A DNA stretch of 63,227 nt, counting the filler, from Parasitella parasitica NRRL 2501 (taxonomy: Eukaryota; Fungi; Mucoromycota): NCBI GenBank assembly GCA_025201805.1. It is 9 parts of 9 records of this genome, joined end to end, with 100 filler letters (N's around TTAATTAATTAA, not from the genome) between each part and the next. Parts side by side here need not be neighbours in the genome. Positions count along the whole stretch, not along the records: positions 4,899 to 33,209 come from MU619244.1; 8 more parts are not named here. The stretch is one strand, 5' to 3'. The first letter of the stretch is position 1; each line of letters opens with the position of its first letter. The notes under the pieces were generated by a model that was not told where the DNA came from, made no database searches, and saw only the letters and a program-made list of their open reading frames with translations. A program made the position numbers and the translations under genes. Below, piece after piece: positions 292-33,209 of the stretch.

Positions 292-1487
292 TCACTGATA
301 ATGGCGAACAAACGTTTCGGACGAAGCCCAGTTACCAAGAGCCGTAATGCTATCCAGCGAAACACCGAGGTCCAAAGCACGTGAAGAGGCCAACGACCGA
401 ATAGAAACTCCAGGTTCGTTAGTACATAATGAAATGAAATTACGGTGAAGCCAGGTAGATATTGTTGACGAGGTTAAAGATTGGTTCACATATTGTTGGA
501 CTTGATAAAAAGAGCATGGAATTGGCTGGGCGAGCTTGTAGTCCTGGATGATCCCGGAGTGCCTTGAAGCATTGAATGGGGCACAATTCGACATTCTCCG
601 CATGGGGATGAACCGTAAATGGTTTGATGATGCGCCTTTTACCCCGAGTTTCTTTTGGAGCCACCACCTGAAAGAGCAGACGATTAGTATCCGAAATTTA
701 GCAAATTCAAAAGGGATTCGAGTCAAGTCCGAGGGTCTCAGAAAAGCTGCCATAGCTAACAGAAAAGCCAGTTTTTCTTGCAGTAGTTTGACGGATGTAG
801 TAGGGCGAGAAGCAATCGAACAAGCAAAGACCAGGGCAGGTGAGACGTCAATTGTTAGCCGATGAATCAACGTTGGGGGATCTAACTTAGCTAAAGCATC
901 GAGGTAAAAATTGATTAATGTATTTTGTTGAAGACACTATTAGGTTCGAGATGAAGATGAGAGATAGCTGCACGGGCGGTTTTCAACGTCGATGTTTGAT
1001 GGTGTTGTTGAGTATCCCGCATTGTTGAAAGAAAATTAACTACATCTAGAGAAGTAAACCTGTCGAAGGAAATCTGATTCTTCACAGCGAAATCCAAAAA
1101 GCGCAATTGATGTTTCTTGTAACACTTGATAGTCGCCGAAGGATGAAGATGTTGATGAAACAAGTCCTGAGTAGCTGTAGGATTGAGACCTAATGCGTTA
1201 ATCCGGTTGCGGATAACTTCCAAACGAAGAGCGTCCAGTTGTTCTGTAGTAAGGGATGTGTTGTCATTGGAGAGGTCGTTTGAACCTGATGGCTGTCCAG
1301 AATGAGAGGAGGGCAAAGACGTAGAGCTTTCACCATGGGAAAACAGATGGCACTCGGTCAAAACGAGATTACGAGAACTATGTACGGAATTTGTTCTAAC
1401 CGGATCTTCTGAAGCACCCGAGAAATTAAGTTCCAAGGTGGATTTGCATATAACAGCCCTAGATTCCTCCATGTCATGGTGAACGCA
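292..1487 (-). mobile_element. Degenerate DIRS-type tyrosine-recombinase retrotransposon (3' part: methyltransferase-like domain plus YR ORF), frameshifted
   Basis: YR motifs LRPSDL and SIRSLASSRALDLGVSLDSITALGNWASSETFVRHY. An overlapping frame at about 1330-1487 reads AFTMTWRNLGLLYANPPWNLISRVLQKIRLEQ, the DIRS MT-like NPPW motif. Several frameshifts and stops. Confidence 0.85.
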
Positions 1488-3115
1488 CACCATGGCTAAC
1501 TTCAGTGCTATTTTTTTTCACATTTATCATCAGTTCTAATGACTAGTGATTAGGTGTATTACTGGATGACTGGTGATAAACCATTTTATCACTAGTGATG
1601 CTTTTATCACAAAGACTAAATTCATGACCAGTGATAAATACGATAATCGCTTGCGATTAGCAATTAGCAGCNNNNNNNNNNNNNNNNNNNNNNNNNNNNN
1701 NNNNNNNNNNNNNNNTTAATTAATTAANNNNNNNNNNNNNNNNNNNNNNNNNNNNNNNNNNNNNNNNNNNNGATGCTGCCGCTTTTTCTATACCTCCTCC
1801 TATTCCGCGCAACGACATTACTAGAAGAAGAAGACGTAGTTCGGATGATGAAGGAGACTCTTACAGAGTAGCAGGAAGAGGTAGAAGGCGGGCAAATTAG
1901 TGTTTTTTTTTTTCATTTATAATAAATGTTATTCAATTTTGGCACCTGCGAGCTCATATATGTTTATCTCAGTAAATAAATTTGCTGTATTCGGAAAATG
2001 GCAAGCAAACTTCAGTAATCACTAATCACCATTTCAATCACAACAAAATTTGTACAACAACCACACCAAATACTTACGGATATCCTCGTTGCTTCGACTT
2101 TGCCACTAATTTGAAAACTATAAATATGTGTACATTTTGGATCTCTTTTTTATTTTTTCTCTCAAATATCAGTTTTCTTACAAATATTAGATACTATCAA
2201 CTGTCATCAACACACAGATGGGGCTCTTTTTATGAAGGTACAGCAAGTCTGATTAGTATTCCGTGGGTGTTAATATGTTATGTGCTAAATTTTACTCACT
2301 GTGATATTTCCATCGTAGATTTCTCCTACCTTGTATAAGTTTAATGATGGTAAGCTGTTATTCTTTCTATCGCATAATGCATATAGCTAATTACCATTGT
2401 GTATAGGTATAATACTGCTGCTTTTCGTTTGTAATTTTTTCAGTTTGTTGTCTTAATATTTCTGTATAAAACAGTTTACAGGCCTTTATTGCTATAATAT
2501 CTTCTTATAAAGTGTCTTATCCTATACATATAGCAGATATATTACTATATAAAAAATATAGCACCTTGTCATATGCGGACAACATCATATATATATGTAT
2601 ACAGCTGCCATGAACATTTATCATAATAATAATATCTTTTGTGTCAGTTCCTCTATACTCCAATAATTTTTTCAGACAAAAATATATGCCTATTTTCAAA
2701 TAAAATAGATTTTTTTCTATCTATAATAACAAAAAGAAACATAATCCAACGTGATATGTAATTGCTGCTGAAAGTTTTTTGGATAATTTTGAATAAATGT
2801 TTATTACCGTGATTTCATAGCAAAACGTACCAGTGCTATAATGAATTTTGTGATTAGGGCTATTTGTTTTTACCCAGTGATTGTTCTATAACTAGAATCA
2901 CTGTTTATTCTCCAGTGATTAATTTATCAATGCTGCTAATTGCTAATCACAAGCGATTATAGTATTTATCACTGGTCATCAATTTAGTCTTTGTGATAAA
3001 AGCATCACTGGTGATAAAATGGTTTATCACCAGTCATCCAGTAAAACACCTAATCACTAGTCATTAGAACTGATGATAAATGTGAAAAAAAATAGCACTG
3101 AAGTTAGCCATGGTG
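1488..3115. mobile_element. Long-TIR DNA transposon ends, CMC/CACTA-like (about 184-bp inverted repeats at 1488-1671 and 2932-3115), with an assembly gap between them
   Basis: CACCATGGCTAACTTCAGTGC at 1488 is mirrored by GCACTGAAGTTAGCCATGGTG ending 3115. Repeated palindromic ATCACTRGTGAT subterminal motifs. An ORF tail ends at about 1900. No clear TSD. Confidence 0.7.
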
Positions 3116-4486
3116 TTGTGGTTGACACAGGCAATGATGGAAAACAGTGCGAGGTTACCTATTACACGATTTGAAATTGAAGCAACTGCTGAGGTATTTG
3201 CTATATACAAGAAAAGTGCATCAGTAAAATAAATTTTGTTGGAGACAATAACAAATAACCACCTACATTAATTGTGAAAAGAGATGATACACTACATCAT
3301 ATAAAATACTTGAAAAAAGAAGCAAGGAGGCAGCATCTTGAAAAAAAGTAGCAAGGTTTAGCTTCATAACTTCTAGAATCAAGGGCAAAAATGAACAGCA
3401 AACCTCTCATATTATCATATATGTTCAGATACTGGGCACAAAATTATACCTGTAGCATGCCTAAATAATAGAAGAGATCTAGTTTTAGTGTATATTAATA
3501 AAGCAAAAGAAGCAAGCCAAAAAGTATTCAATACTACCTTGACATTGACACCCAAACGACGTAATGCAAAAAAGTGATTCATACATAGCATTATCTTTAG
3601 CTAGTGCCTATATATATAGCAGTAAAAGAAGTCAGTCATTTAGTAGCTACAAACAATTTAATGCACATAGCAATACCATGCTCTCATATGAAAGATTGAG
3701 CTGAGTAGAGCCTCTATATATTATTGACAAAAGGATTATTAATAGTTCATTAGAATAAGCTGGAATACATACCATAATGATAGCAATACACAAAAAATAT
3801 GTTTGCGTATGATTTATTTATTCCAAGCTATACTGCAAGCTTTTCCTTTATAATAAAAAATAAGCTACAATTTCTTGTGATGAAACTACAGATACGTGAA
3901 GATGTTAGTACTCTGTATAGTGTACTTATATTTGGCACAAAATGTGCTAATATTGTCTGTTTTTTAAAGTTAAAATACCAGTTTATAAAGTTGTAAAGTT
4001 AGTGAAAACAAAAGAAAAAGACCAAGGAGAAGCTAACAAAGAAGCTAAAATATGCATTCGGTCATTACAATATGCAATGTTTGCGCTAAGCATACAGTAA
4101 AAAGCCAATAGAAAAACACCACTACAAGGTCATCTCAACATTTGAAAGCAAGGCATGTACAAACAAAAATATACTTTATTCAAGTATATTGCTACTGGTG
4201 CAAGCATTATCATCACCAGCGGCTTTTTTTTTCATCATCTTCTACAACACTTTGGTTAACAGTAGGTACTTCTTCGTCACTTTTTGCTCTCGAGTGAACA
4301 TTAGTTTGATCGTGCGAGCGTAAATAAACTTTTACTCAAAATAGATGCGATCTTTGCAATATCTCAACGAATATTTGGTAACAAATGTTACTACAAGCAC
4401 AAAAAAAATCGAAATGTCTCAGGAATAATATTATACAATTAAAAAATGAGCCATCTCAACTTTTTTTATAAATGTACATTTGGGCT

Positions 4487-4798
4487 TGTGAAATACATTC
4501 ACTATGATGATCTGCATTCCACTTCTAGATTCATCCAGTTACCTTAAATTGATATAAACTACATATGCGCACAGATAATAAGATGTGCAATACAGATTTA
4601 TACTATATAAGATATAAGCTAGAGACGGCACCATTAGGATGGATGACGCTATAGACTGATACTTATATCTCGACACAAGCCTTAGACATTTACTAGATTT
4701 AGTATATGCTACGAGCTTATGCTATATAAGATCTATGCTTCAGATACGTATCCCCAGTTTCCAGATACGCACTACAAGACATATACTTATATTCATGA
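4487..4798 (+). repeat. LTR-like repeat, family D (copies at 37332-37794 and reverse at about 49850-49911)
   Basis: Starts TGTGAAATACATTCAC and is nearly identical to the copy at 37332. Truncated by the gap. Confidence 0.7.
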
Positions 4799-6829: not shown

Positions 6830-8048
6830 TTAATAGAGACCTTGCTAGGTTATAAATTTTTCAGATTTCTAAAACAGTACGATTTGTGTAATACCTGTAC
6901 TACGACAAGTTCTTTATAGAAATTACGTGAATTGGAAAGAAACTTGTAAAATTTTGTGCATGTCATAATTATTACATTTTTTCCCCGTTATCAATACACA
7001 AAGCAAAATAATTACTAAAAATATGGACTACACTACTATTGAAAATGATTTGATCCTTTTAATACATGCTAGAAGCATGCGTGAATCTACCAAAAGACAA
7101 AGAGTAAAGTATTGAGCGTTTAATTTTGGAGGGATTGACAGATCAAAACCGCCTACGGCCTCTTCTTGGTTCGTTGAGCAAATGATTGCTATAACAATCC
7201 AGTAAAGTCATCACCTCTTCTTTCAATGACTGGACTAGGTGAAGTAAAGACGGGAGTCTTCATTGTCCTAATATTATTAATACTGTCATTTCCTTTGTCT
7301 TTATCCTTTGTCTTCTCGCTGTGATGAATTTCTCCTTCCAAAGACATCTTCTGCAACATCTTAGCGGCATCCTCTTTATCTTTCAACCCTTGAGCTCTCT
7401 TGCTTTTGTGCGCGGCAGCAGCGCCTTTATCATCGCTTCTCTACATGAGAATGTGAAAATTACTGTATCGTCTTATTTGTTAACATCGCATTTACCACCT
7501 CCAAGCTTTGCGAGCTGCTTCATCCATCTCAGGAGTAGAGTTACCACTACTTGACTTGTTGTTCTAAGTTTTTCCGTAAAGGTGCTCATCAATTTTTTAC
7601 ACCTTTCTTGAACAGCTTGTCTCTTTAGACTATTTGGTCACTATCTATACTGTTCACATCCTCAGCAACCTTCTCCCGTTGTTGTATTTGTTCACCGTGG
7701 ACTACACGACGTGGTCGAAATTTCACATAAGCCCGAAGCAGCTCTAGTGTCGTTGTGCTTGTCCATACACCTCTCTACATTAATGCAACGAGGAGTCTTG
7801 TTTGCCTTCACTGTTGTTATCAACACATGGCTACTGGTTCCTGATCTTTGACGTTTTCTTCTGCCATCAGTTTCATTATGTTGAGGGTCTATTCAATAAA
7901 ACTTGCTTTTGTTTTGTTCATTTTAGGGCACATATTGTTGATTTTTGCTTTTAGTAGAGAAAAGACGGCTTGAATACAATTTTTCATCAAAATTTTGGCC
8001 TAAACCCAAAATTTTATAAATTGCAACATTTCATACCATTTTGTTATA

Positions 8049-9744
8049 CACCTTTTCTCAAAATGATGTCGCACAATAAAAATTTAAGTTGTCGCACTTT
8101 TTTGAAAAAAGATGACGTATTTCCGAGAAAAAAAGTGTCGCACTTTCAAGAAAAAATATGTCGCAATTTTCAGAAAAAAGATGTCGCATTTTCAGGGAAA
8201 AAGATGGCGCATCGCATTTTTATTAAATAGGAAGACAATTCAAACAGTCATCAAAACGTCTCACAGAATAACGAGCGAAGCCTTCGAAGGATGATGGCAA
8301 TACACCGTTGCAAGCATCGCCAATCTTAGCAGGAAGCGTGTCTTTCTTGAGAATAAACTCCCTTTTAACACCACTCTTGACAACTGACCAAAATTGTTCG
8401 ATTGGATTTAGCTCAGGAGAGTAGGGTGGTAAATAGATACATTTATACCCACGAGACTCAATAGCAACTCTAATCAACTTAGATGTGTGGATGGGAGCAT
8501 TGTCCATCAACAAGTAGTGGCCCTTCATTTCAGGATATTTATCCATCTCTTCGAGAATATCATCAATAAACCTCAGGTAATGGTTAGTTATGGTTCCTTT
8601 TGTTTGTGCTTTAGCCCCTCCTGCTAGCTTTCGTTTTTTGGAAGGGGGTATAGGCTTTCTCAAACAAACCTTGATCAAGCCTTTACTTGATATAGCACCC
8701 AAGATTGAAATCAAGTTTGCTCTTGCCGTAAGTACCTTCACAATAGCTGGCTCTCCCTTCGGGGCCCATCCCTGAGTTCTTCTCAAATTTGCATTAAATC
8801 CTGCCTCATCAATGAAGACACAGTTACTCATGTAGTCTACGCCCATATTCTTCATCTCCTCCACCCATTTCTTTCTCGCCTGAATCCTCTCTGGAGTGTT
8901 TCGCTCTAAAGGCTCCAGTTGCACTTTCTTCAAACTTAAAATCCAAAGATCATTCAAATAACGATACAGTGTGGGTTTCGAAAGCGATAAACCCTCAAAA
9001 GTACTAGTCAATCGATCAAGTAGCTGGTCAGCTGTGGCGGTTGGCTGCTTGTAATAAAACTCTGTAACAGCGTTCCTCGTTGCTTCTGCCAATTCACCTT
9101 CTGCTTCAATAATTCTTGGTCGGCCAATAATTTTGAACAAAGAGTCTGGGTCTTTCTTCCAGGTACTATACCACCGTTGTAAACTTCTTGGTTCTAAACC
9201 CAAATCCAGAGCGACTGCTCTAGCGCTATTCTTTGGGTGTATATCAACCAAGTGAACGGCATGTGCCTTAACTTCATTACTGACTCGTTTGTTCTTGATA
9301 ATGTTATTTTTTGCCTCTTTGGAATCAGTTTTTTTATTTTTGGTAGCTTTGTGTTCCAAAAAGGTTGAATCCTGATCAACTTCCATCATCCCTTTCTCTC
9401 TAGCCTCGATATAAGCGCTATAGGATGCAAGTTCCTCTAACTTGTACGGATCATCATTCCCAGTGATATCCATTGGGTCATTTCCATCCTCATCCAGGAC
9501 ATTTCCTTGTCCATCCTCAAAATAAAATGAATAGCTCATCATTGTAAATGTACTTCAAGAAAAAAAAGTACTGAAATTTAGGCGACATCTTTTTCCCCTA
9601 AAAATGCGACATCTTTTTTCTGAAAAGTGCGACATATTTTTTCTTGAAAGTGCGACACTTTTTTTCTCGGAAATACGTCATCTTTTTTCAAAAAAGTGCG
9701 ACAACTTAAATTTTTATTGTGCGACATCATTTTGAGAAAAGGTG
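8049..9744 (-). mobile_element. Complete Tc1/IS630-family (DD34E) transposon with about 160-bp TIRs and a TA target-site duplication
   Basis: TA|CACCTTTTCTCAAAATGATGTCGCAC...GTGCGACATCATTTTGAGAAAAGGTG|TA. The TIRs span about 8049-8210 and 9582-9744 and contain repeated TGTCGCA motifs. Confidence 0.95.
8223..9542 (-). CDS. Tc1/IS630-like DDE transposase, 439 aa, intact
   Basis: HTH region, FIDEAG, and MDNAPIH followed 34 residues later by the Glu of SPELNPIE (DD34E). Confidence 0.95.
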   Translation of the reverse strand: MMSYSFYFEDGQGNVLDEDGNDPMDITGNDDPYKLEELASYSAYIEAREKGMMEVDQDSTFLEHKATKNKKTDSKEAKNNIIKNKRVSNEVKAHAVHLVDIHPKNSARAVALDLGLEPRSLQRWYSTWKKDPDSLFKIIGRPRIIEAEGELAEATRNAVTEFYYKQPTATADQLLDRLTSTFEGLSLSKPTLYRYLNDLWILSLKKVQLEPLERNTPERIQARKKWVEEMKNMGVDYMSNCVFIDEAGFNANLRRTQGWAPKGEPAIVKVLTARANLISILGAISSKGLIKVCLRKPIPPSKKRKLAGGAKAQTKGTITNHYLRFIDDILEEMDKYPEMKGHYLLMDNAPIHTSKLIRVAIESRGYKCIYLPPYSPELNPIEQFWSVVKSGVKREFILKKDTLPAKIGDACNGVLPSSFEGFARYSVRRFDDCLNCLPI

Positions 9745-10242
9745 TAATATCCTACTTTCTTTAAATGGCAATGTTACATTTTTTTTACAAAAATGGCATG
9801 ATTTTTACAAAAATATTGTAAAAATTTCAAATATTTATAACCTAGCAAGGTCTCTATTAAATGAGTCTTTAGTTAATCTAACTGAATCGCTTTTCAAGCT
9901 GCTTGCTTTCTACTGATATTCCGTAATTCTATTATAAAGCACGTAGAAAATAACACCGAAGATAGTCAAAAGCAAACATAGAAAGGTAAAATATAAAATT
10001 TATATGTCTGGAAGGATGATGGATCTCTCGCCTTTGTAAGTTGTACATCGCGGCCGTGTATCGTTGTTCCCTCACTGCACAGGTATCTCATTTTTGCGGA
10101 AACTATTCGGGAGGCATTATCTTTGCATATGTCTGGGAGTAGACCTTCAGCTTAAATGAGGGAATGCCTTAACTTCCTGACTTTTTTTTTTTCTTTTTCT
10201 CTCTAATGTCATTGACTAATACTTTCCGTCGATGTACCACGA

Positions 10243-10851
10243 CTACTCTAACATTCTTGGTAATGAATGTGCAAATAATGAGCCTATATAGGTAATTCTG
10301 GTAGCGTATTCCACCAAGTTGTCAATTGATTTCATGAATGTTGTATTTGTGCATGTGATTTTAAGTGAAGACTTGATGGTGAAAGCTTCTATCTCTTCGT
10401 CATCATTGTGTTGAACCACCTTCTTTTCTTTTCGATGTGGACAGAGTTTACTGGTAGACCTTGCATGATCTGTCTTTTTACATGAAGGACACAGCATTGG
10501 TTTGTTGGATTTGTTTTGTTTCTTGAACTCCTCTAAAGCAACTTTTTTGTCTTCTTTCTGTTGGACTTTCTTAGATAAAGTAAGAGTTTTGCTGGAAGAA
10601 GAACTTATATCAATAAATGAGCTAGCAGTCTTTTCTGTTGAGCTAGAAGCCTTTGCTGTTGAACTCGAAGCATCGTTGGTGGTGGGAATGCCTGGTGTTG
10701 TCAAATCATCCTCCTCTTTTTGGTGATTCAAATCTGCACCTAAAACATAGTAAGACATATATTCTTTTCACAATGTATGTGTTAGATATTTACTTCTTAT
10801 AGCTCTCTTTCCTTTCCTATCTAGTGGATCGTCTTTATGTTTACGCTTCAT
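10243..10851 (-). pseudogene. Truncated N-terminal part of a probable Mucorales Fanzor1-like (TnpB-related) protein
   Basis: Short first exon MKRKHKDDPLDRKGKRAIR (ATG at 10851), an intron, then CPSCKKTDHARSTSKLCP and FTIKSSLKITC...LVEYATRITYIGSLFA, recalled as the N-terminal pattern of Mucorales Fanzor1 proteins. No RuvC follows. Confidence 0.55.
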
Positions 10852-31047: not shown

Positions 31048-31850
31048 TTAGCTGTTTATAAAGGAAATAAAGGGATGCGCAATTATCAGAAAGCGAGACT
31101 ATTTATCGCCATTACTTTATGCATATGATCTGCATAACAGGGGCTGTGTGGCATATGCTACATGAGAAAAATAAAGGGAAATGTACTCTATGTATATTTA
31201 TTATTTACTGAGGGAAGTCTAAAATCATTTCAATACAAAAAATTGTATATCAAAGAAGCCTGTCGACGTTTAGCAAGAAACTGCAGACATTGCATAGAAA
31301 GTTGGCTGTAGAAGGGAGACGGAATCCTAGTACAGTCTATATATGTCAAACGAATTCACTGTGAATTACTGGTAGTATGACTCGAGTGCTTTGCTATTAG
31401 CCCCTGAAAATTGAAGAGGGATCAACCTTCAGTAATATGTTGACAAATCAGGGCATTTACAGTGTACTCACTAATTTTCCTTAGATACCACACAGAAAAT
31501 GAGAGCATGTATAAATAACAGAAGCTTTAGCATAATAACCTTTCGTATCTCTTTGCATCTTGGTTTATTACACTCACATTGGCATCACCTTTAAATCAAC
31601 TGCCATTATATACTTCTTGCCACACGTTTCGTCAAGTGCAGACACACATGTGCATTTCCCAGTTAAATTCAAATTCTTCAAACCAAGACAATAGTGTTAT
31701 TGTGTTACTGAACTATTTAAACCAGATGAGAAAAAAGAATACTGACAATACAAAATCTTTTTTTTTTTTTTTTTTTTTTAATACACTCTTTCCCTTATTG
31801 CTTCATTTCGCTTCACTGATTTAAATTTTACTCCATTTTACTTTGCAGAA

Positions 31851-32357
31851 ATGATTGCTAAACATTTATTACAAGCATTTATTGCAGTCTTTGTATTCAT
31901 TACTGCATGTTCCGCCCAAATTGGCACCCAAGTCAATTTCCCAATCACAAATAGTACAATTGAACCTGGGCAAAAAATCGATATTGCTTATGGGTATCAA
32001 AACATGGGCAATGGTTCTTACGTGGTCGACATTGATCTCTGGCAAGATAATACTCTGACTTTGTTGGCCAAAAATATCGATACAAATGTACCCATTCCAT
32101 CTGGAAACTCAACCGGCACTCAGCTTAACTTCTTCTTGAACTCTACTTATAGTTGGTCTGTCCCCCGTGGATTGAACAAAACTGTTTACTTGACTGTCAC
32201 CACGAAATCAAAGCTTTCATACTCCAGCGTCGATTTAAGTATGCGTTCCCGTGCTATTGTACTTCACGTAAATGCTGGTATTATGAATTCGCCTATGCAA
32301 AAAATTAGTTTGGTCGCATTGTCGATGCTTATTATACGCCTTACTGGAGTTTTCTAA
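31851..32357 (+). CDS. Small secreted, possibly GPI-anchored protein (beta-sandwich-like)
   Basis: 168-aa single ORF with a signal peptide, several N-glycosylation sequons and a hydrophobic tail. Confidence 0.75.
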   Translation: MIAKHLLQAFIAVFVFITACSAQIGTQVNFPITNSTIEPGQKIDIAYGYQNMGNGSYVVDIDLWQDNTLTLLAKNIDTNVPIPSGNSTGTQLNFFLNSTYSWSVPRGLNKTVYLTVTTKSKLSYSSVDLSMRSRAIVLHVNAGIMNSPMQKISLVALSMLIIRLTGVF

Positions 32358-32715
32358 TTCTTAGATGTGTTAAATAAAATAAAAATATACTAATAAATCC
32401 ATCATCTATATGGGAGCTCGTAATAAAGTTAATGTTACAATGACAATAATTTCAGTTACACATTTATGTTACACGCGCTCAAGTTACCTGTATTGCCTCT
32501 TTCAAAATTACCAAATAAACGGGCATGATTTAGTGCAGTTCAACCCAAAAAGGTCAATCAAATGGGTAAGCTAACATAAAAATATCAGTCTAAAAAGAAA
32601 GGCCATGAGCTTGGGTCAATTGCAATCACACAGTCAGGTTTGATGAGACAGTGAGTAAAGAATTCGTGAGGGGACCATCAATTTCTATATTAACGACAGT
32701 AGCAAGCTTCTGATA

Positions 32716-33209
32716 CAGTTTTTCTACTTTAAATTCAGACGATGTTAATTTTTTTCTGGACGAATTGAAATTCATATTTAGACAAAAAGCTTACCTATTT
32801 TGGAAAACAAAATAATTATTTTCAGATAAAAAAGAAATTATTTTAGACGAATCAGAGTTAATTATTGGACCATTATCTTACCTATTGTGGAAAAAGTAAA
32901 AATGGAAATTAGACAATTTAAGTTGGTTTTTGATGGTATTATAGTATGATCATGAATTTACCTTAGAAAAGCAGAAAAACTTGGGTAAAAAGAAAATAAT
33001 GGTTAGGATATTGACTAAAGTTTAGAATGTATATATACTTACATCTGTAAGGAGTATGAGAGAGTTATATCAATCATACGGGTGAGGTGTGTCGCTTAAA
33101 TATGTCTGGACGCTCGTTGTTATTGAATACAGCGAAGAGAAAGATGTCCAATATGTTATTTGCAGCCATTATGTCGCGATTCCATACCGTATTACAAGTG
33201 TTTTGCTGA
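32716..33209 (-). mobile_element. 3' end of a TA-flanked DNA transposon carrying a Fanzor-type gene
   Basis: TA|CAGTTTTTCTAC terminus. Nine YRGAH motifs at 32736, 32757, 32779, 32801, 32823, 32844, 32866, 32888 and 32910 (21-22 bp period). The Fanzor C-terminus lies upstream and is cut by the gap. Confidence 0.7.
33074..33208 (-). CDS. C-terminal fragment of a Fanzor/TnpB-family RNA-guided nuclease (end of zinc ribbon plus RuvC-III), truncated by the assembly gap
   Basis: Reads QQNTCNTVWNRDIMAANNILDIFLFAVFNNNERPDIFKRHTSPV*. The pattern C-x3-W-N-R-D-x2-AA-x-NI...RP is the TnpB/Fanzor hallmark. Confidence 0.8.
   Translation of the reverse strand, partial: QQNTCNTVWNRDIMAANNILDIFLFAVFNNNERPDIFKRHTSPV

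What the first reader, a model, noticed from the sequence alone, without database searches (positions are those of the whole stretch)
32694..33209. Fanzor-type RNA-guided nuclease C-terminus inside a TA-flanked transposon end: candidate omegaRNA plus guide locus
Seen: a minus-strand frame missed by the ORF track, CNTVWNRDIMAANNI...ERPDIFKR*, stops at 33074. About 360 bp further on, the element ends at TA|CAG (32714-32716). Established: this motif is the zinc ribbon/RuvC-III end of TnpB/Fanzor proteins, and their omegaRNA runs through the transposon's right end into flanking DNA that acts as the guide. Inference: this is a Tc1/mariner-type element carrying a Fanzor1. The scaffold would lie in 33073-32716(-), and the guide would be the flank starting TATCAGAAGCTTGCTACTG. 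The catalytic Asp of NRD is retained.
Basis: partly seen in the sequence, partly recalled or inferred. Interest (0 to 1): 0.85.

Follow-up and report, generated by a model that had tools for sequence, protein, structure and literature searches.

The report
Fanzor1 nuclease in Tc1-like transposon
This is the tail end of a Fanzor1 gene (a eukaryotic RNA-guided DNA cutter related to bacterial TnpB) inside a recently active, TA-flanked cut-and-paste transposon of the fungus Parasitella parasitica; the kind of element is already known, so the find is correct but ordinary.

Summary
On the minus strand, a frame ending in ...CNTVWNRDIMAANNI...FKRHTSPV* stops at 33074-33076. Similarity to at least 7 other genomic copies (91-100% identical) ends at 32713/32714, so the element ends at TA(32714-32715)|CAG. 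The last exon passes Pfam's cut-off for the TnpB zinc-ribbon domain. Its best solved relatives are Fanzor1 proteins (GtFz1, SpuFz1). A readable sister copy carries the Fanzor fingerprints: DPG, Glu six residues before CxxC, and WNRD. The element is 3.6-3.8 kb, has about 190-bp inverted ends with internal direct repeats and TA on both sides, and encodes no transposase, so it is a non-autonomous Tc1/mariner-type carrier. The genome is Parasitella parasitica, whose PpFz1 is already solved; this is a different Fanzor1 family. RNA contigs show the mRNA is expressed and that RNA covers the transposon end. No small RNA, conserved fold or covariation supports a specific omegaRNA. The gene-upstream flank is AA(A)-TA in 9 of 9 insertions, against 1 of 9 at the other end. 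That fits a TAM and agrees with PpFz1's ATN. The interior of this copy is withheld, so its intactness is unknown. Verdict: a new member of a known kind.

The parts
33074..33209 (-). Last 44 codons plus stop of the Fanzor1 gene: second half of the zinc ribbon (C-x4-C), the RuvC-III WNRD motif and the C-terminal tail. The frame is cut by the piece's edge at 33209.
   Evidence: Translation. Pfam PF07282 is above its cut-off on the whole last exon of sister copies. Alignment to GtFz1 and SpuFz1. A 2606-nt RNA contig lies on 33084-33209 with no differences.
32906..33073 (-). Non-repeated part of the 3' untranslated region, between the stop codon and the inner edge of the right inverted repeat.
   Evidence: Copy alignments. 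RNA contig depth continues through it. No significant fold.
32716..32905 (.). Right terminal inverted repeat, about 190 bp, terminus CAGTTTTTCTAC. It contains two copies of CTTACCTATTKTGGAAAA (32790-32807, 32877-32894) and four YYRGACRA motifs (32734-32742, 32755-32763, 32777-32785, 32842-32850). The outer ~100 nt (32716 to ~32812) are also conserved in related families and are the most likely omegaRNA scaffold.
   Evidence: The same 190 bp lies inverted 3.6-3.8 kb away in every full copy. Repeat coordinates. Conservation in related families L019, L020, L021, L029, L033.
32714..32715 (.). TA dinucleotide flanking the element; inferred target-site duplication.
   Evidence: TA sits on the outside of 17 of the 19 family termini found in the genome; the other two read CA.
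32694..32713 (-). Unique flank just outside the right end (minus strand TCAGAAGCTTGCTACTGTCG): candidate guide segment of a read-through omegaRNA.
   Evidence: Similarity among copies stops here. An RNA contig runs from 32725, 12 nt inside the element, through this flank. Its role as a guide is inferred from Fanzor literature.

Best explanation
SHOWN. Window 32714-33209 is the gene-downstream (right) end of a 3.77-kb non-autonomous cut-and-paste DNA transposon. The element spans G000:C8:382705-386472 with a TA on each side. It has ~190-bp terminal inverted repeats and CAGT termini, and so is Tc1/mariner-type. Its only gene is an intron-containing Fanzor1 of roughly 840 aa on the minus strand. 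Fanzor1 is the eukaryotic branch of the TnpB/Cas12 RNA-guided nucleases. The host is Parasitella parasitica (Mucorales). The family has at least 8 copies in this genome, some 100% identical over the visible 500 bp, so it moved recently. It is transcribed.

INFERRED, by analogy with characterised Fanzor1 systems. Transcription runs through the right inverted repeat and the TA into the flank. The last ~100 nt of the element plus the TA would form the omegaRNA scaffold. The next ~15-20 nt (here UCAGAAGCUUGCUACUG...) would be the guide. The Fanzor-omegaRNA complex would then cut a transposon-free copy of the same site: an A-rich motif ending in the target TA (about AAATA; compare the ATN TAM of PpFz1), followed by the guide-matching flank. 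Repair from the occupied copy would restore the element.

The confidence of 0.8 is for the whole statement. The identity part alone is about 0.93; the omegaRNA/guide/homing part alone is about 0.5.
For: Family membership:
- Pfam PF07282 scores 29.7/28.6 bits against a cut-off of 26.3; NCBIfam guided_TnpB gives a weak hit.
- The best PDB matches are GtFz1 (E 2.3e-4) and SpuFz1.
- The Fanzor fingerprints defined in PMC10711439 are present in the readable copies: IFAIDPGIRD, IDEYLTSQVCNIC (Glu six residues before CxxC), C-x4-C, and WNRD 7 residues later.

Element:
- Copy boundaries, TIRs and TA flanks.
- No transposase ORF in the readable copy.
- The element is absent from the orthologous locus of strain CBS 412.66.

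Organism: P0004 is annotated Parasitella parasitica on a 512435-bp contig, the length of G000:C2.

Expression:
- Run X1 is spliced RNA.
- A 2606-nt contig lies on 33084-33209.
- Contigs cover the UTR and TIR.
- One contig runs 32725->31816 with two minus-strand GT..AG introns.

TAM-like asymmetry:
- The gene-upstream flank is AA(A)-TA in 8/8 insertions in this genome, against 1/8 at the downstream end (Fisher p 0.0014). The background frequency of AA before TA is 0.11.
- An 80%-identical relative in the other strain has AAAA-TA as well.

Literature:
- Fanzor1-only elements with Mariner TIRs and TA TSDs (PMC3627910).
- TIR and TSD form part of the Fanzor1 guide-RNA scaffold, and RNAs extend ~15 nt past the TSD (PMC10711439).
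- PpFz1 has TAM ATN and a 75-nt omegaRNA (PMC11423790).
Against: - No small-RNA data, so no omegaRNA has been seen.
- The boundary-crossing contig has only 12 nt inside the element, below the tool's 31-nt rule for bridging. Contigs are strand-blind, so part of it may come from the convergent TRAP-beta mRNA.
- The 3' region folds no better than shuffles: z = +0.42 for the TIR and -0.71 for the whole 360 nt.
- The consensus fold of 9 related ends has about 0 kcal/mol and no compensatory pair.
- There is no Rfam match.
- Conservation between the two 80%-identical families is flat across exons, introns, UTR and TIR, so nothing marks the end as an RNA gene.
- The interior of this copy, and of the other youngest copies, is withheld (N), so its reading frame cannot be judged. 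The readable copies are broken by a 25-nt deletion, a stop codon, frameshifts and a Cys->Tyr change in the zinc ribbon.
- No autonomous partner with these termini was found.
- No exact empty site was recovered, because the intergenic DNA of the other strain is too diverged. The TA duplication is therefore inferred from the flanks.
Confidence: 0.8

Rival explanations
1. This particular copy is a dead relic. The gene is broken like its readable sisters. The end is conserved only because the copies are young, so no working omegaRNA/guide pair operates at this site.
For: Every copy whose interior can be read carries lesions. L016 has a 25-nt deletion at 2173, a stop at 3662 and Cys->Tyr in the zinc ribbon. 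L008 and L018 have frameshifts. L017 has many indels. Element lengths differ: 3583, 3721, 3772 and 3809 bp.
Against: The visible 500 bp of this copy are 100% identical to two other copies. A 2.6-kb mRNA contig matches the window's 126 coding bases without a difference. The family is absent from this locus in another strain, so the insertion is recent. The interior cannot be read either way.
Confidence: 0.3
2. The conserved end is only a transposase-binding inverted repeat. The RNA over the flank is host transcription: an antisense non-coding RNA and/or the 3' end of the convergent TRAP-beta gene. It is not an omegaRNA precursor.
For: The TIR has the repeated short motifs typical of transposase binding sites, as does the autonomous Tc1/mariner in the same window. 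There is no fold or covariation signal. TRAP-beta (31851-32357, + strand) ends 357 bp from the element. A + strand GT..AG joint inside the Fanzor 3' UTR shows that transcription enters from that side.
Against: All characterised Fanzor1 loci encode their guide RNA at this end, overlapping the TIR (PMC10432273, PMC10711439, PMC11423790). The flank RNA is spliced on the minus strand, the Fanzor strand, and carries no ORF. The one-sided AAA-TA motif is hard to explain without a TAM.
Confidence: 0.2
3. The AA(A)-TA motif at the gene-upstream end reflects the insertion preference of the unknown transposase, or belongs to the element itself. It is not a Fanzor TAM.
For: No empty site was recovered, so the exact limits of the left end are inferred. 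Tc1/mariner transposases do have weak AT-rich target preferences (general knowledge).
Against: A symmetric transposase dimer should give a palindromic preference, with TT after the downstream TA. That is seen in only 1 of 8 cases here, against 8 of 8 upstream. The motif ends in A-TA, which equals the ATN TAM measured for PpFz1 of the same species. The right end does not carry the complementary TATTT, so the A's are not part of the inverted repeat.
Confidence: 0.3
4. It is a bacterial TnpB (contamination) or an IS607-type Fanzor2, not a Fanzor1.
For: The Pfam and NCBIfam models that hit are built mainly from prokaryotic TnpB.
Against: The gene has spliceosomal introns that fit homologue alignments. 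It lies on a 407-kb fungal contig beside conserved Mucorales genes. It sits in a TA/TIR element rather than an IS607. The closest solved proteins are Fanzor1s. Homologues occur only in Mucorales fungi.
Confidence: 0.02

Closest known systems
PpFz1, the Parasitella parasitica Fanzor1 solved by cryo-EM (PDB 9CF0-9CF3; Xu et al., Cell 2024, PMC11423790)
   Same: Same species, same protein class (Fanzor1), and the guide RNA is taken from the transposon's right end. Its measured TAM, 5'-ATN, agrees with the A-TA found upstream of every insertion of the present family.
   Different: It is a different family. The N-terminus and the 71-nt omegaRNA in Table S3 do not resemble this element. That omegaRNA is not found in this assembly. 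None of the exons searched retrieved the PpFz1 chains from the PDB even at E<=10. Whether this family has the cyclophilin-binding FRI insertion is unknown.
SpuFz1 (Spizellomyces punctatus) and GtFz1 (Guillardia theta), biochemically proven Fanzor1 nucleases (PMC10432273, PMC11423790)
   Same: They are the best sequence matches among solved structures, over RuvC-II, the zinc ribbon and RuvC-III. The locus plan is the same: one gene between inverted repeats, a TAM at the left end, and omegaRNA plus guide at the right end. SpuFz1's TAM, CATA, also ends in TA.
   Different: Similarity is only about 30% and is limited to the C-terminal ~75 residues. This protein is larger (~840 aa against roughly 650-730, by chain length minus the MBP tag). 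Its TIRs are much longer (~190 bp) with internal direct repeats. GtFz1 has Asn where this protein keeps the canonical Asp.
Fanzor1-only Mariner-type elements of Bao and Jurka 2013 (e.g. PUl-4; families in Mucor circinelloides, Rhizopus oryzae, Phycomyces; PMC3627910)
   Same: The architecture is the same: a non-autonomous element that encodes only Fanzor1, carries Mariner-like TIRs and is flanked by TA. The host order (Mucorales) is also the same.
   Different: Parasitella was not in that survey. The Mucorales examples named there (ROr-4, PBl-3, MCi-4) were assigned to MuDR with 9-bp TSDs, whereas this family has TA. No confirmed autonomous Mariner with matching TIRs was found here.
Bacterial TnpB of IS200/IS605 (e.g. 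ISDra2)
   Same: RuvC nuclease plus zinc ribbon. The guide RNA is derived from the transposon's right end and reads into the flank. The TAM lies at the left end. The proposed role is homing/retention of the element.
   Different: TnpB has D-hydrophobic-G and the canonical Glu ~50 residues before the zinc finger. This protein has DPG and the alternative Glu 6 residues before it. The carrier is a eukaryotic TIR/TA element and the gene has introns and NLS-like basic stretches.

Membership tests
TnpB/Cas12 superfamily | C-terminal zinc-ribbon (TNB) domain recognised by the curated profile PF07282 | tested here: met
   29.7 bits (L016 last exon) and 28.6 bits (L014 last exon, 100% identical to the window over the shared 44 codons), against a cut-off of 26.3. 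The 44 codons in the window alone are too short to pass on their own.
TnpB/Cas12 superfamily | RuvC (RNase H-like) fold carrying the D-E-D triad | tested here: inconclusive
   All three motifs are present in sequence. The AlphaFold model of the last exon alone had pLDDT 40.5 and could not be used. No full-length unbroken protein was available to fold.
Fanzor (PMC10711439 fingerprints) | RuvC-I motif is D-P-G | tested here: met
   IFAIDPGIRD in exon 4 of the readable copy L016. VDPGI/IDPGI in Rhizopus, Mucor and Parasitella homologues. Not visible in the window's own copy, which is withheld.
Fanzor (PMC10711439 fingerprints) | Alternative RuvC-II glutamate six residues before the first CxxC of the zinc finger | tested here: met
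   IDEYLTSQVCNIC gives E-x6-C-x2-C. It aligns with EHYTSQECPSC of GtFz1.
Fanzor (PMC10711439 fingerprints) | Second cysteine pair, then the RuvC-III Asp 4-8 residues later | tested here: met
   CQQNTC, then WNRD with D 7 residues after the last Cys. The pair is C-x4-C and lies 23 residues after the first pair, outside the published regular expression (CxxC, 12-18). GtFz1 shows the same looser spacing.
Fanzor1 (as opposed to Fanzor2) | Carried by a eukaryotic non-IS607 transposon; enlarged protein; closest to Fanzor1 proteins | tested here: met
   TIR/TA element with no serine recombinase. About 840 aa from the exon map. The only significant PDB hits are Fanzor1s. No phylogeny was built.
Tc1/mariner superfamily element | TA target-site duplication | tested here: met
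   TA lies outside 17 of the 19 family termini in the genome; the other two read CA. No exact empty site was obtained, so duplication is inferred from the flanks.
Tc1/mariner superfamily element | Terminal inverted repeats with Tc1-like CAGT termini | tested here: met
   ~190-bp TIRs, 96-98% alike within a copy, starting CAGT. That CAGT is Tc1-like comes from general knowledge.
Tc1/mariner superfamily element | DD(E/D) transposase, in the element or in an autonomous partner with the same termini | tested here: not met
   No transposase in the readable copy. The genome has >=171 DDE_3 hits, but none lies within 5 kb of the 19 matching termini. The six best DDE_3 loci and the window's own Tc1/mariner have unrelated ends. 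The element is therefore filed as Tc1/mariner-type and non-autonomous, with its partner unknown.
OMEGA system (omegaRNA-guided) | A non-coding RNA spanning the right end, with a scaffold inside the element and a guide in the flank | tested here: inconclusive
   RNA contigs cover the UTR and TIR, and one crosses the end by 12 nt into the flank. They are assembled, strand-blind contigs of long RNA. No small-RNA run exists here.
OMEGA system (omegaRNA-guided) | Conserved RNA secondary structure of the scaffold | tested here: not met
   z-scores +0.42 and -0.71. The consensus fold is ~0 kcal/mol with no compensatory changes. No Rfam family matches. Known Fanzor1 scaffolds are small and variable, so this lowers the claim only weakly.
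OMEGA system (omegaRNA-guided) | Transposon-adjacent motif next to the left end | tested here: met
   AA(A)-TA in 8/8 upstream flanks against 1/8 downstream, p 0.0014, and again in the other strain. That it acts as a TAM is not testable with these tools.

The most novel reading that the evidence does not exclude
The strictly one-sided AAA-TA motif, found at the gene-upstream end of every independent insertion (three sub-families, two strains), would be a natural footprint of Fanzor activity. Only insertions that land with a TAM on the correct side can be re-copied by omegaRNA-guided cutting of the empty site. On this reading a cut-and-paste Tc1/mariner-type element survives by RNA-guided homing. 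The biological role of Fanzor1 in its native host has not yet been demonstrated, so this would be in-genome evidence for it.
Probability: 0.35. Interest if true: 0.55.

Novelty: new member of a known kind. Interest (0 to 1): 0.3.

Why it matters
Fanzor1 nucleases are the eukaryotic counterpart of TnpB/Cas12 and are being developed as compact genome editors. Their association with Mariner-type elements has been known since 2013, and a Fanzor1 from this same species has been solved, so the find itself is not surprising. It contributes three things. First, it describes a second, distinct, recently mobile and transcribed Fanzor1 family in P. parasitica with unusually long repeat-rich TIRs. Second, it gives a sequence-only TAM prediction (A-rich, ending in the target TA) that agrees with the TAM measured for PpFz1. 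Third, it offers a set of independent insertions whose one-sided flank motif could be used to test whether Fanzor promotes retention of cut-and-paste transposons.

Tried and rejected
2. PDB searches with exon 3 and exon 4 gave nothing. A profile built from patchy annotated homologues also gave nothing.
3. AlphaFold on the last exon with a 7-row alignment gave pLDDT 40.5, which is unusable, so no fold search was run.
4. RNA folding of the TIR and of the whole 3' region, the consensus fold of nine related ends, an inverted-repeat search and Rfam gave no support for a specific scaffold. A 14-nt complementarity between 32717-32730 and 32968-32981 is absent from the related family L019, so I dismissed it.
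5. The bacterial promoter/terminator scan is irrelevant to a fungus and came out at background level.
6. The PpFz1 omegaRNA pattern is not in this assembly.
7. The search for an autonomous partner failed. The DDE_3 hit next to the C35 copy looks like a nested insertion and runs into withheld sequence. The best DDE_3 loci have unrelated ends.
8. The exact empty site could not be aligned, because the other strain's intergenic DNA is only ~80% identical.
9. Identity by region between the two 80%-related families is flat, so it gives no constraint signal.
10. Exons were searched one by one by reference.
11. The withheld interior of the copies was left as it is.
Full report
**Observation**

Reading window 32400-33209 on the minus strand and translating 33208-33074 gives QQNTCNTVWNRDIMAANNILDIFLFAVFNNNERPDIFKRHTSPV*. 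The stop codon is at 33076-33074. The frame is still open at 33209, where the piece ends. Beyond that point the genome reads N because the stretch is withheld (L013 has N at 1401-4505, which is C8:383200-386304). I did not try to rebuild it.

**Repeat structure**

- A search of the window's own genome (32.8 Mb, 450 contigs) with 32600-33209 found copies on C188, C46, C104, C25, C4 and C158 at 98-100% identity and on C2 at 91%. All alignments begin at query base 114/115, which is window 32713/32714.
- The same first ~190 bp recur in inverted orientation 3.6-3.8 kb away in each full copy. These are terminal inverted repeats.
- Full-copy lengths are 3583 bp (C188), 3721 (C46), 3772 (C8, this copy: C8:382703-386474 including the flanking TAs) and 3809 (C25).
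- Termini read TA|CAGT(T/G)TTTCTAC...GTAGAAAAACTG|TA. A pattern search found 19 such ends in the genome and none for the reversed control.
- In the window, TA is at 32714-32715 and the first element base is 32716. The stop-to-end distance is 358 nt.
- The TIR carries two copies of an 18-nt motif and four short YYRGACRA motifs. The autonomous Tc1/mariner at window 8047-9746 has a similar layout.

**The gene**

One copy, L016 (G000:C25:18700-24400), is fully readable. Mucorales homologues aligned to it by tblastn, together with canonical GT..AG sites in the sequence, give this exon map:

| Feature | L016 coordinates |
|---|---|
| ATG | 1680 |
| Intron | ~1740-1794 |
| Intron | ~3318-3361 |
| Intron | ~3767-3819 |
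| Stop | 4360-4362 |

- The last exon passes Pfam PF07282 (Cas12f1-like TNB): 29.7 and 28.6 bits against a cut-off of 26.3. It gives weak NCBIfam TnpB hits.
- Among solved structures its best matches are Guillardia theta Fanzor1 (E 2.3e-4) and SpuFz1.
- Yoon et al. (PMC10711439) define Fanzors by a DPG RuvC-I motif and an alternative Glu six residues before the zinc finger. Both are present: IFAIDPGIRD and IDEYLTSQVCNIC.
- These are followed by C-x4-C, and then WNRD with the Asp 7 residues after the last Cys.
- WNRD aligns with WNRD of SpuFz1 and WNRN of GtFz1. The latter is the documented Asn variant of the third catalytic residue.
- Exon 2 has a C-x2-C...H...C knuckle and basic NLS-like runs.

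**State of the copies**

- L016 is broken. It has a 25-nt deletion at 2173 relative to the C2 and C35 copies, a stop at 3662, and Tyr for the third zinc-ribbon Cys.
- Other readable stretches have their own frameshifts.
- The youngest copies (C8, C188, C46), which are identical over the visible 500 bp, are masked inside. Whether any copy is intact is therefore unknown.

**Organism and relatives**

- Homologue P0004 is annotated Parasitella parasitica and sits on a 512435-bp contig, exactly the length of G000:C2.
- Relatives occur in Rhizopus microsporus, Mucor, Cokeromyces and Mycotypha.
- The genome has at least 41 TNB-domain hits and at least 171 DDE_3 hits.
- P. parasitica already has a solved Fanzor1, PpFz1, with TAM 5'-ATN and a 75-nt omegaRNA (PMC11423790). 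Its N-terminus and omegaRNA (Table S3) are unrelated to this element. Its omegaRNA pattern is absent from this assembly. None of the exons searched retrieved PpFz1 chains. This is a separate family.
- Fanzor1-only elements with Mariner TIRs and TA duplications were described in 2013 (PMC3627910).

**Carrier element**

- The readable copy has no transposase.
- None of the 19 termini lies near a DDE_3 hit, and the best DDE_3 loci have unrelated ends.
- The element is therefore a non-autonomous Tc1/mariner-type element whose partner is unknown.
- Related families with 78-85% similar ends also carry Fanzor1. L019 is interrupted by a non-LTR retroelement. L021 is an internally deleted 1.1-kb derivative.

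**Insertion polymorphism**

The neighbouring + strand ORF at 31851-32357 is the TRAP-beta orthologue, 168 aa across Mucorales. In strain CBS 412.66 (LN733710.1, L037) the two flanks of the C8 element are collinear and contain no element sequence. The intergenic DNA is too diverged to give an exact empty site. That strain has an ~80% identical relative elsewhere (L038:2648-6722).

**RNA**

The one public run found (X1) is clearly RNA, because its contigs skip canonical introns in the neighbouring genes.

- A 2606-nt contig lies on 33084-33209 without differences. This fits a full-length Fanzor mRNA.
- Contig depth continues through the UTR and the TIR.
- An 811-nt contig runs from 32725 (12 nt inside the element) through the flank to 31816. 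It has two introns that are GT..AG on the minus strand and carries no ORF, so it is antisense to TRAP-beta.

This fits read-through from the element, but three caveats apply. Twelve nucleotides is below the tool's bridging rule. Contigs are strand-blind, so the stretch nearest the element could come from TRAP-beta's 3' end. Near-identical copies cannot be told apart. A + strand GT..AG joint at 33001/2-33053/4 shows that transcription also enters the element from the TRAP-beta side.

**Candidate omegaRNA**

- The 192-nt TIR and the 360-nt 3' region fold no better than shuffles (z +0.42 and -0.71).
- The consensus fold of nine related ends has no energy and no compensatory pair.
- Rfam has no match.
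- Identity to the 80% relative is flat across exons, introns, UTR and TIR.
- What is conserved across related families is the outer ~100 nt, from about 32812 to 32716. This size matches known Fanzor1 RNAs (75-150 nt).
- Yoon et al. report that the TIR and TSD form part of the Fanzor1 scaffold and that the RNAs extend ~15 nt past the TSD.
- I therefore place the likely scaffold in the outer TIR plus the TA, and the guide at 32713->~32694 (TCAGAAGC...).

**Flank asymmetry**

| End | Preceded by AA(A)-TA | Copies |
|---|---|---|
| Gene-upstream | 8 of 8 | C188, C25, C35, C8, C46, C77, C44, C106 |
| Gene-downstream (equivalent position) | 1 of 8 | C8, C188, C46, C104, C25, C2, C44, C77 |

Fisher's test gives p = 0.0014. 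The background frequency of AA before TA in the window is 0.11.

- The CBS 412.66 relative adds one more on each side: AAAA-TA upstream and none downstream.
- Two orientations (C77, C106) are inferred indirectly, and one further end with AAA-TA has unknown orientation.
- A symmetric transposase preference would not be one-sided, and the A's are not mirrored at the right end.
- The motif ends in A-TA, which equals the ATN TAM of PpFz1.
- The simplest reading is a TAM of about AAATA. The predicted target is the empty site ...AAAA-TA-TCAGAAGCTTGC...

**Verdict**

The mechanism is the standard Fanzor/OMEGA model. It is supported here by the TAM-like flank motif and by transcription across the end, but no small RNA, structure or activity has been shown. 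This is a new member of a known kind, in a species whose Fanzor1 is already characterised, so interest is modest.

Noticed in passing
window 8047-9746: An apparently intact autonomous Tc1/mariner. It has a 439-aa DDE_3 transposase ORF (8223-9542, minus strand) between 156-bp TIRs that are 98% complementary and carry repeated ATGTCGCA motifs. Its termini (TACACC...) are unrelated to the Fanzor element's, so it is not the obvious partner.
   Followed up: partly
window 10243-10758 (minus): A 171-aa ORF has the same CPSCK..H..CP zinc-knuckle and basic stretch as exon 2 of the Fanzor gene (60% identity over 50 aa). No other Fanzor part lies nearby. It is either a truncated Fanzor relic or a module shared with another transposon protein.
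   Followed up: partly
window 31816-32725: A minus-strand, twice-spliced RNA with no ORF runs antisense across the conserved TRAP-beta gene (31851-32357, + strand), starting at or inside the Fanzor element's end. The transposon may be driving antisense transcription of its neighbour.
   Followed up: partly
window 33001-33054: An RNA joint skips 53 nt with GT..AG on the + strand, inside the Fanzor 3' UTR, at low depth (15). No genomic copy has this deletion, so it looks like a spliced antisense transcript entering from the TRAP-beta side. Transcription over the transposon end is therefore convergent.
   Followed up: partly
L037 (LN733710.1) and L038:2648-6722 (LN719426.1), strain CBS 412.66: The orthologous locus in the other sequenced strain lacks the element. 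TRAP-beta is only 90% identical between the two assemblies, so the strains are quite diverged. That strain has an 80%-identical, also degraded relative elsewhere, annotated as two separate hypothetical proteins (P0009 and P0014).
   Followed up: yes
L016:3940-3990 (last exon); homologues in alignment A2: A conserved proline-rich loop (PPxPxD) lies between RuvC-I and the alternative Glu. PpFz1 binds cyclophilin through prolines in a RuvC insertion that has been reported only in Parasitella and Rhizopus. Whether this loop is equivalent was not tested.
   Followed up: no
L019 (G000:C77:43500-49900): A second Fanzor1 family with 80-85% similar TIRs. Its gene is interrupted by a non-LTR retrotransposon fragment on the opposite strand, and its left terminus is degraded.
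   Followed up: partly
G000:C8:396623-396817 and G000:C8:352173-352237: Two further Fanzor-like zinc-ribbon matches lie on the same contig within 10 kb of the window's two edges. The genome has at least 41 such matches in all.
   Followed up: no
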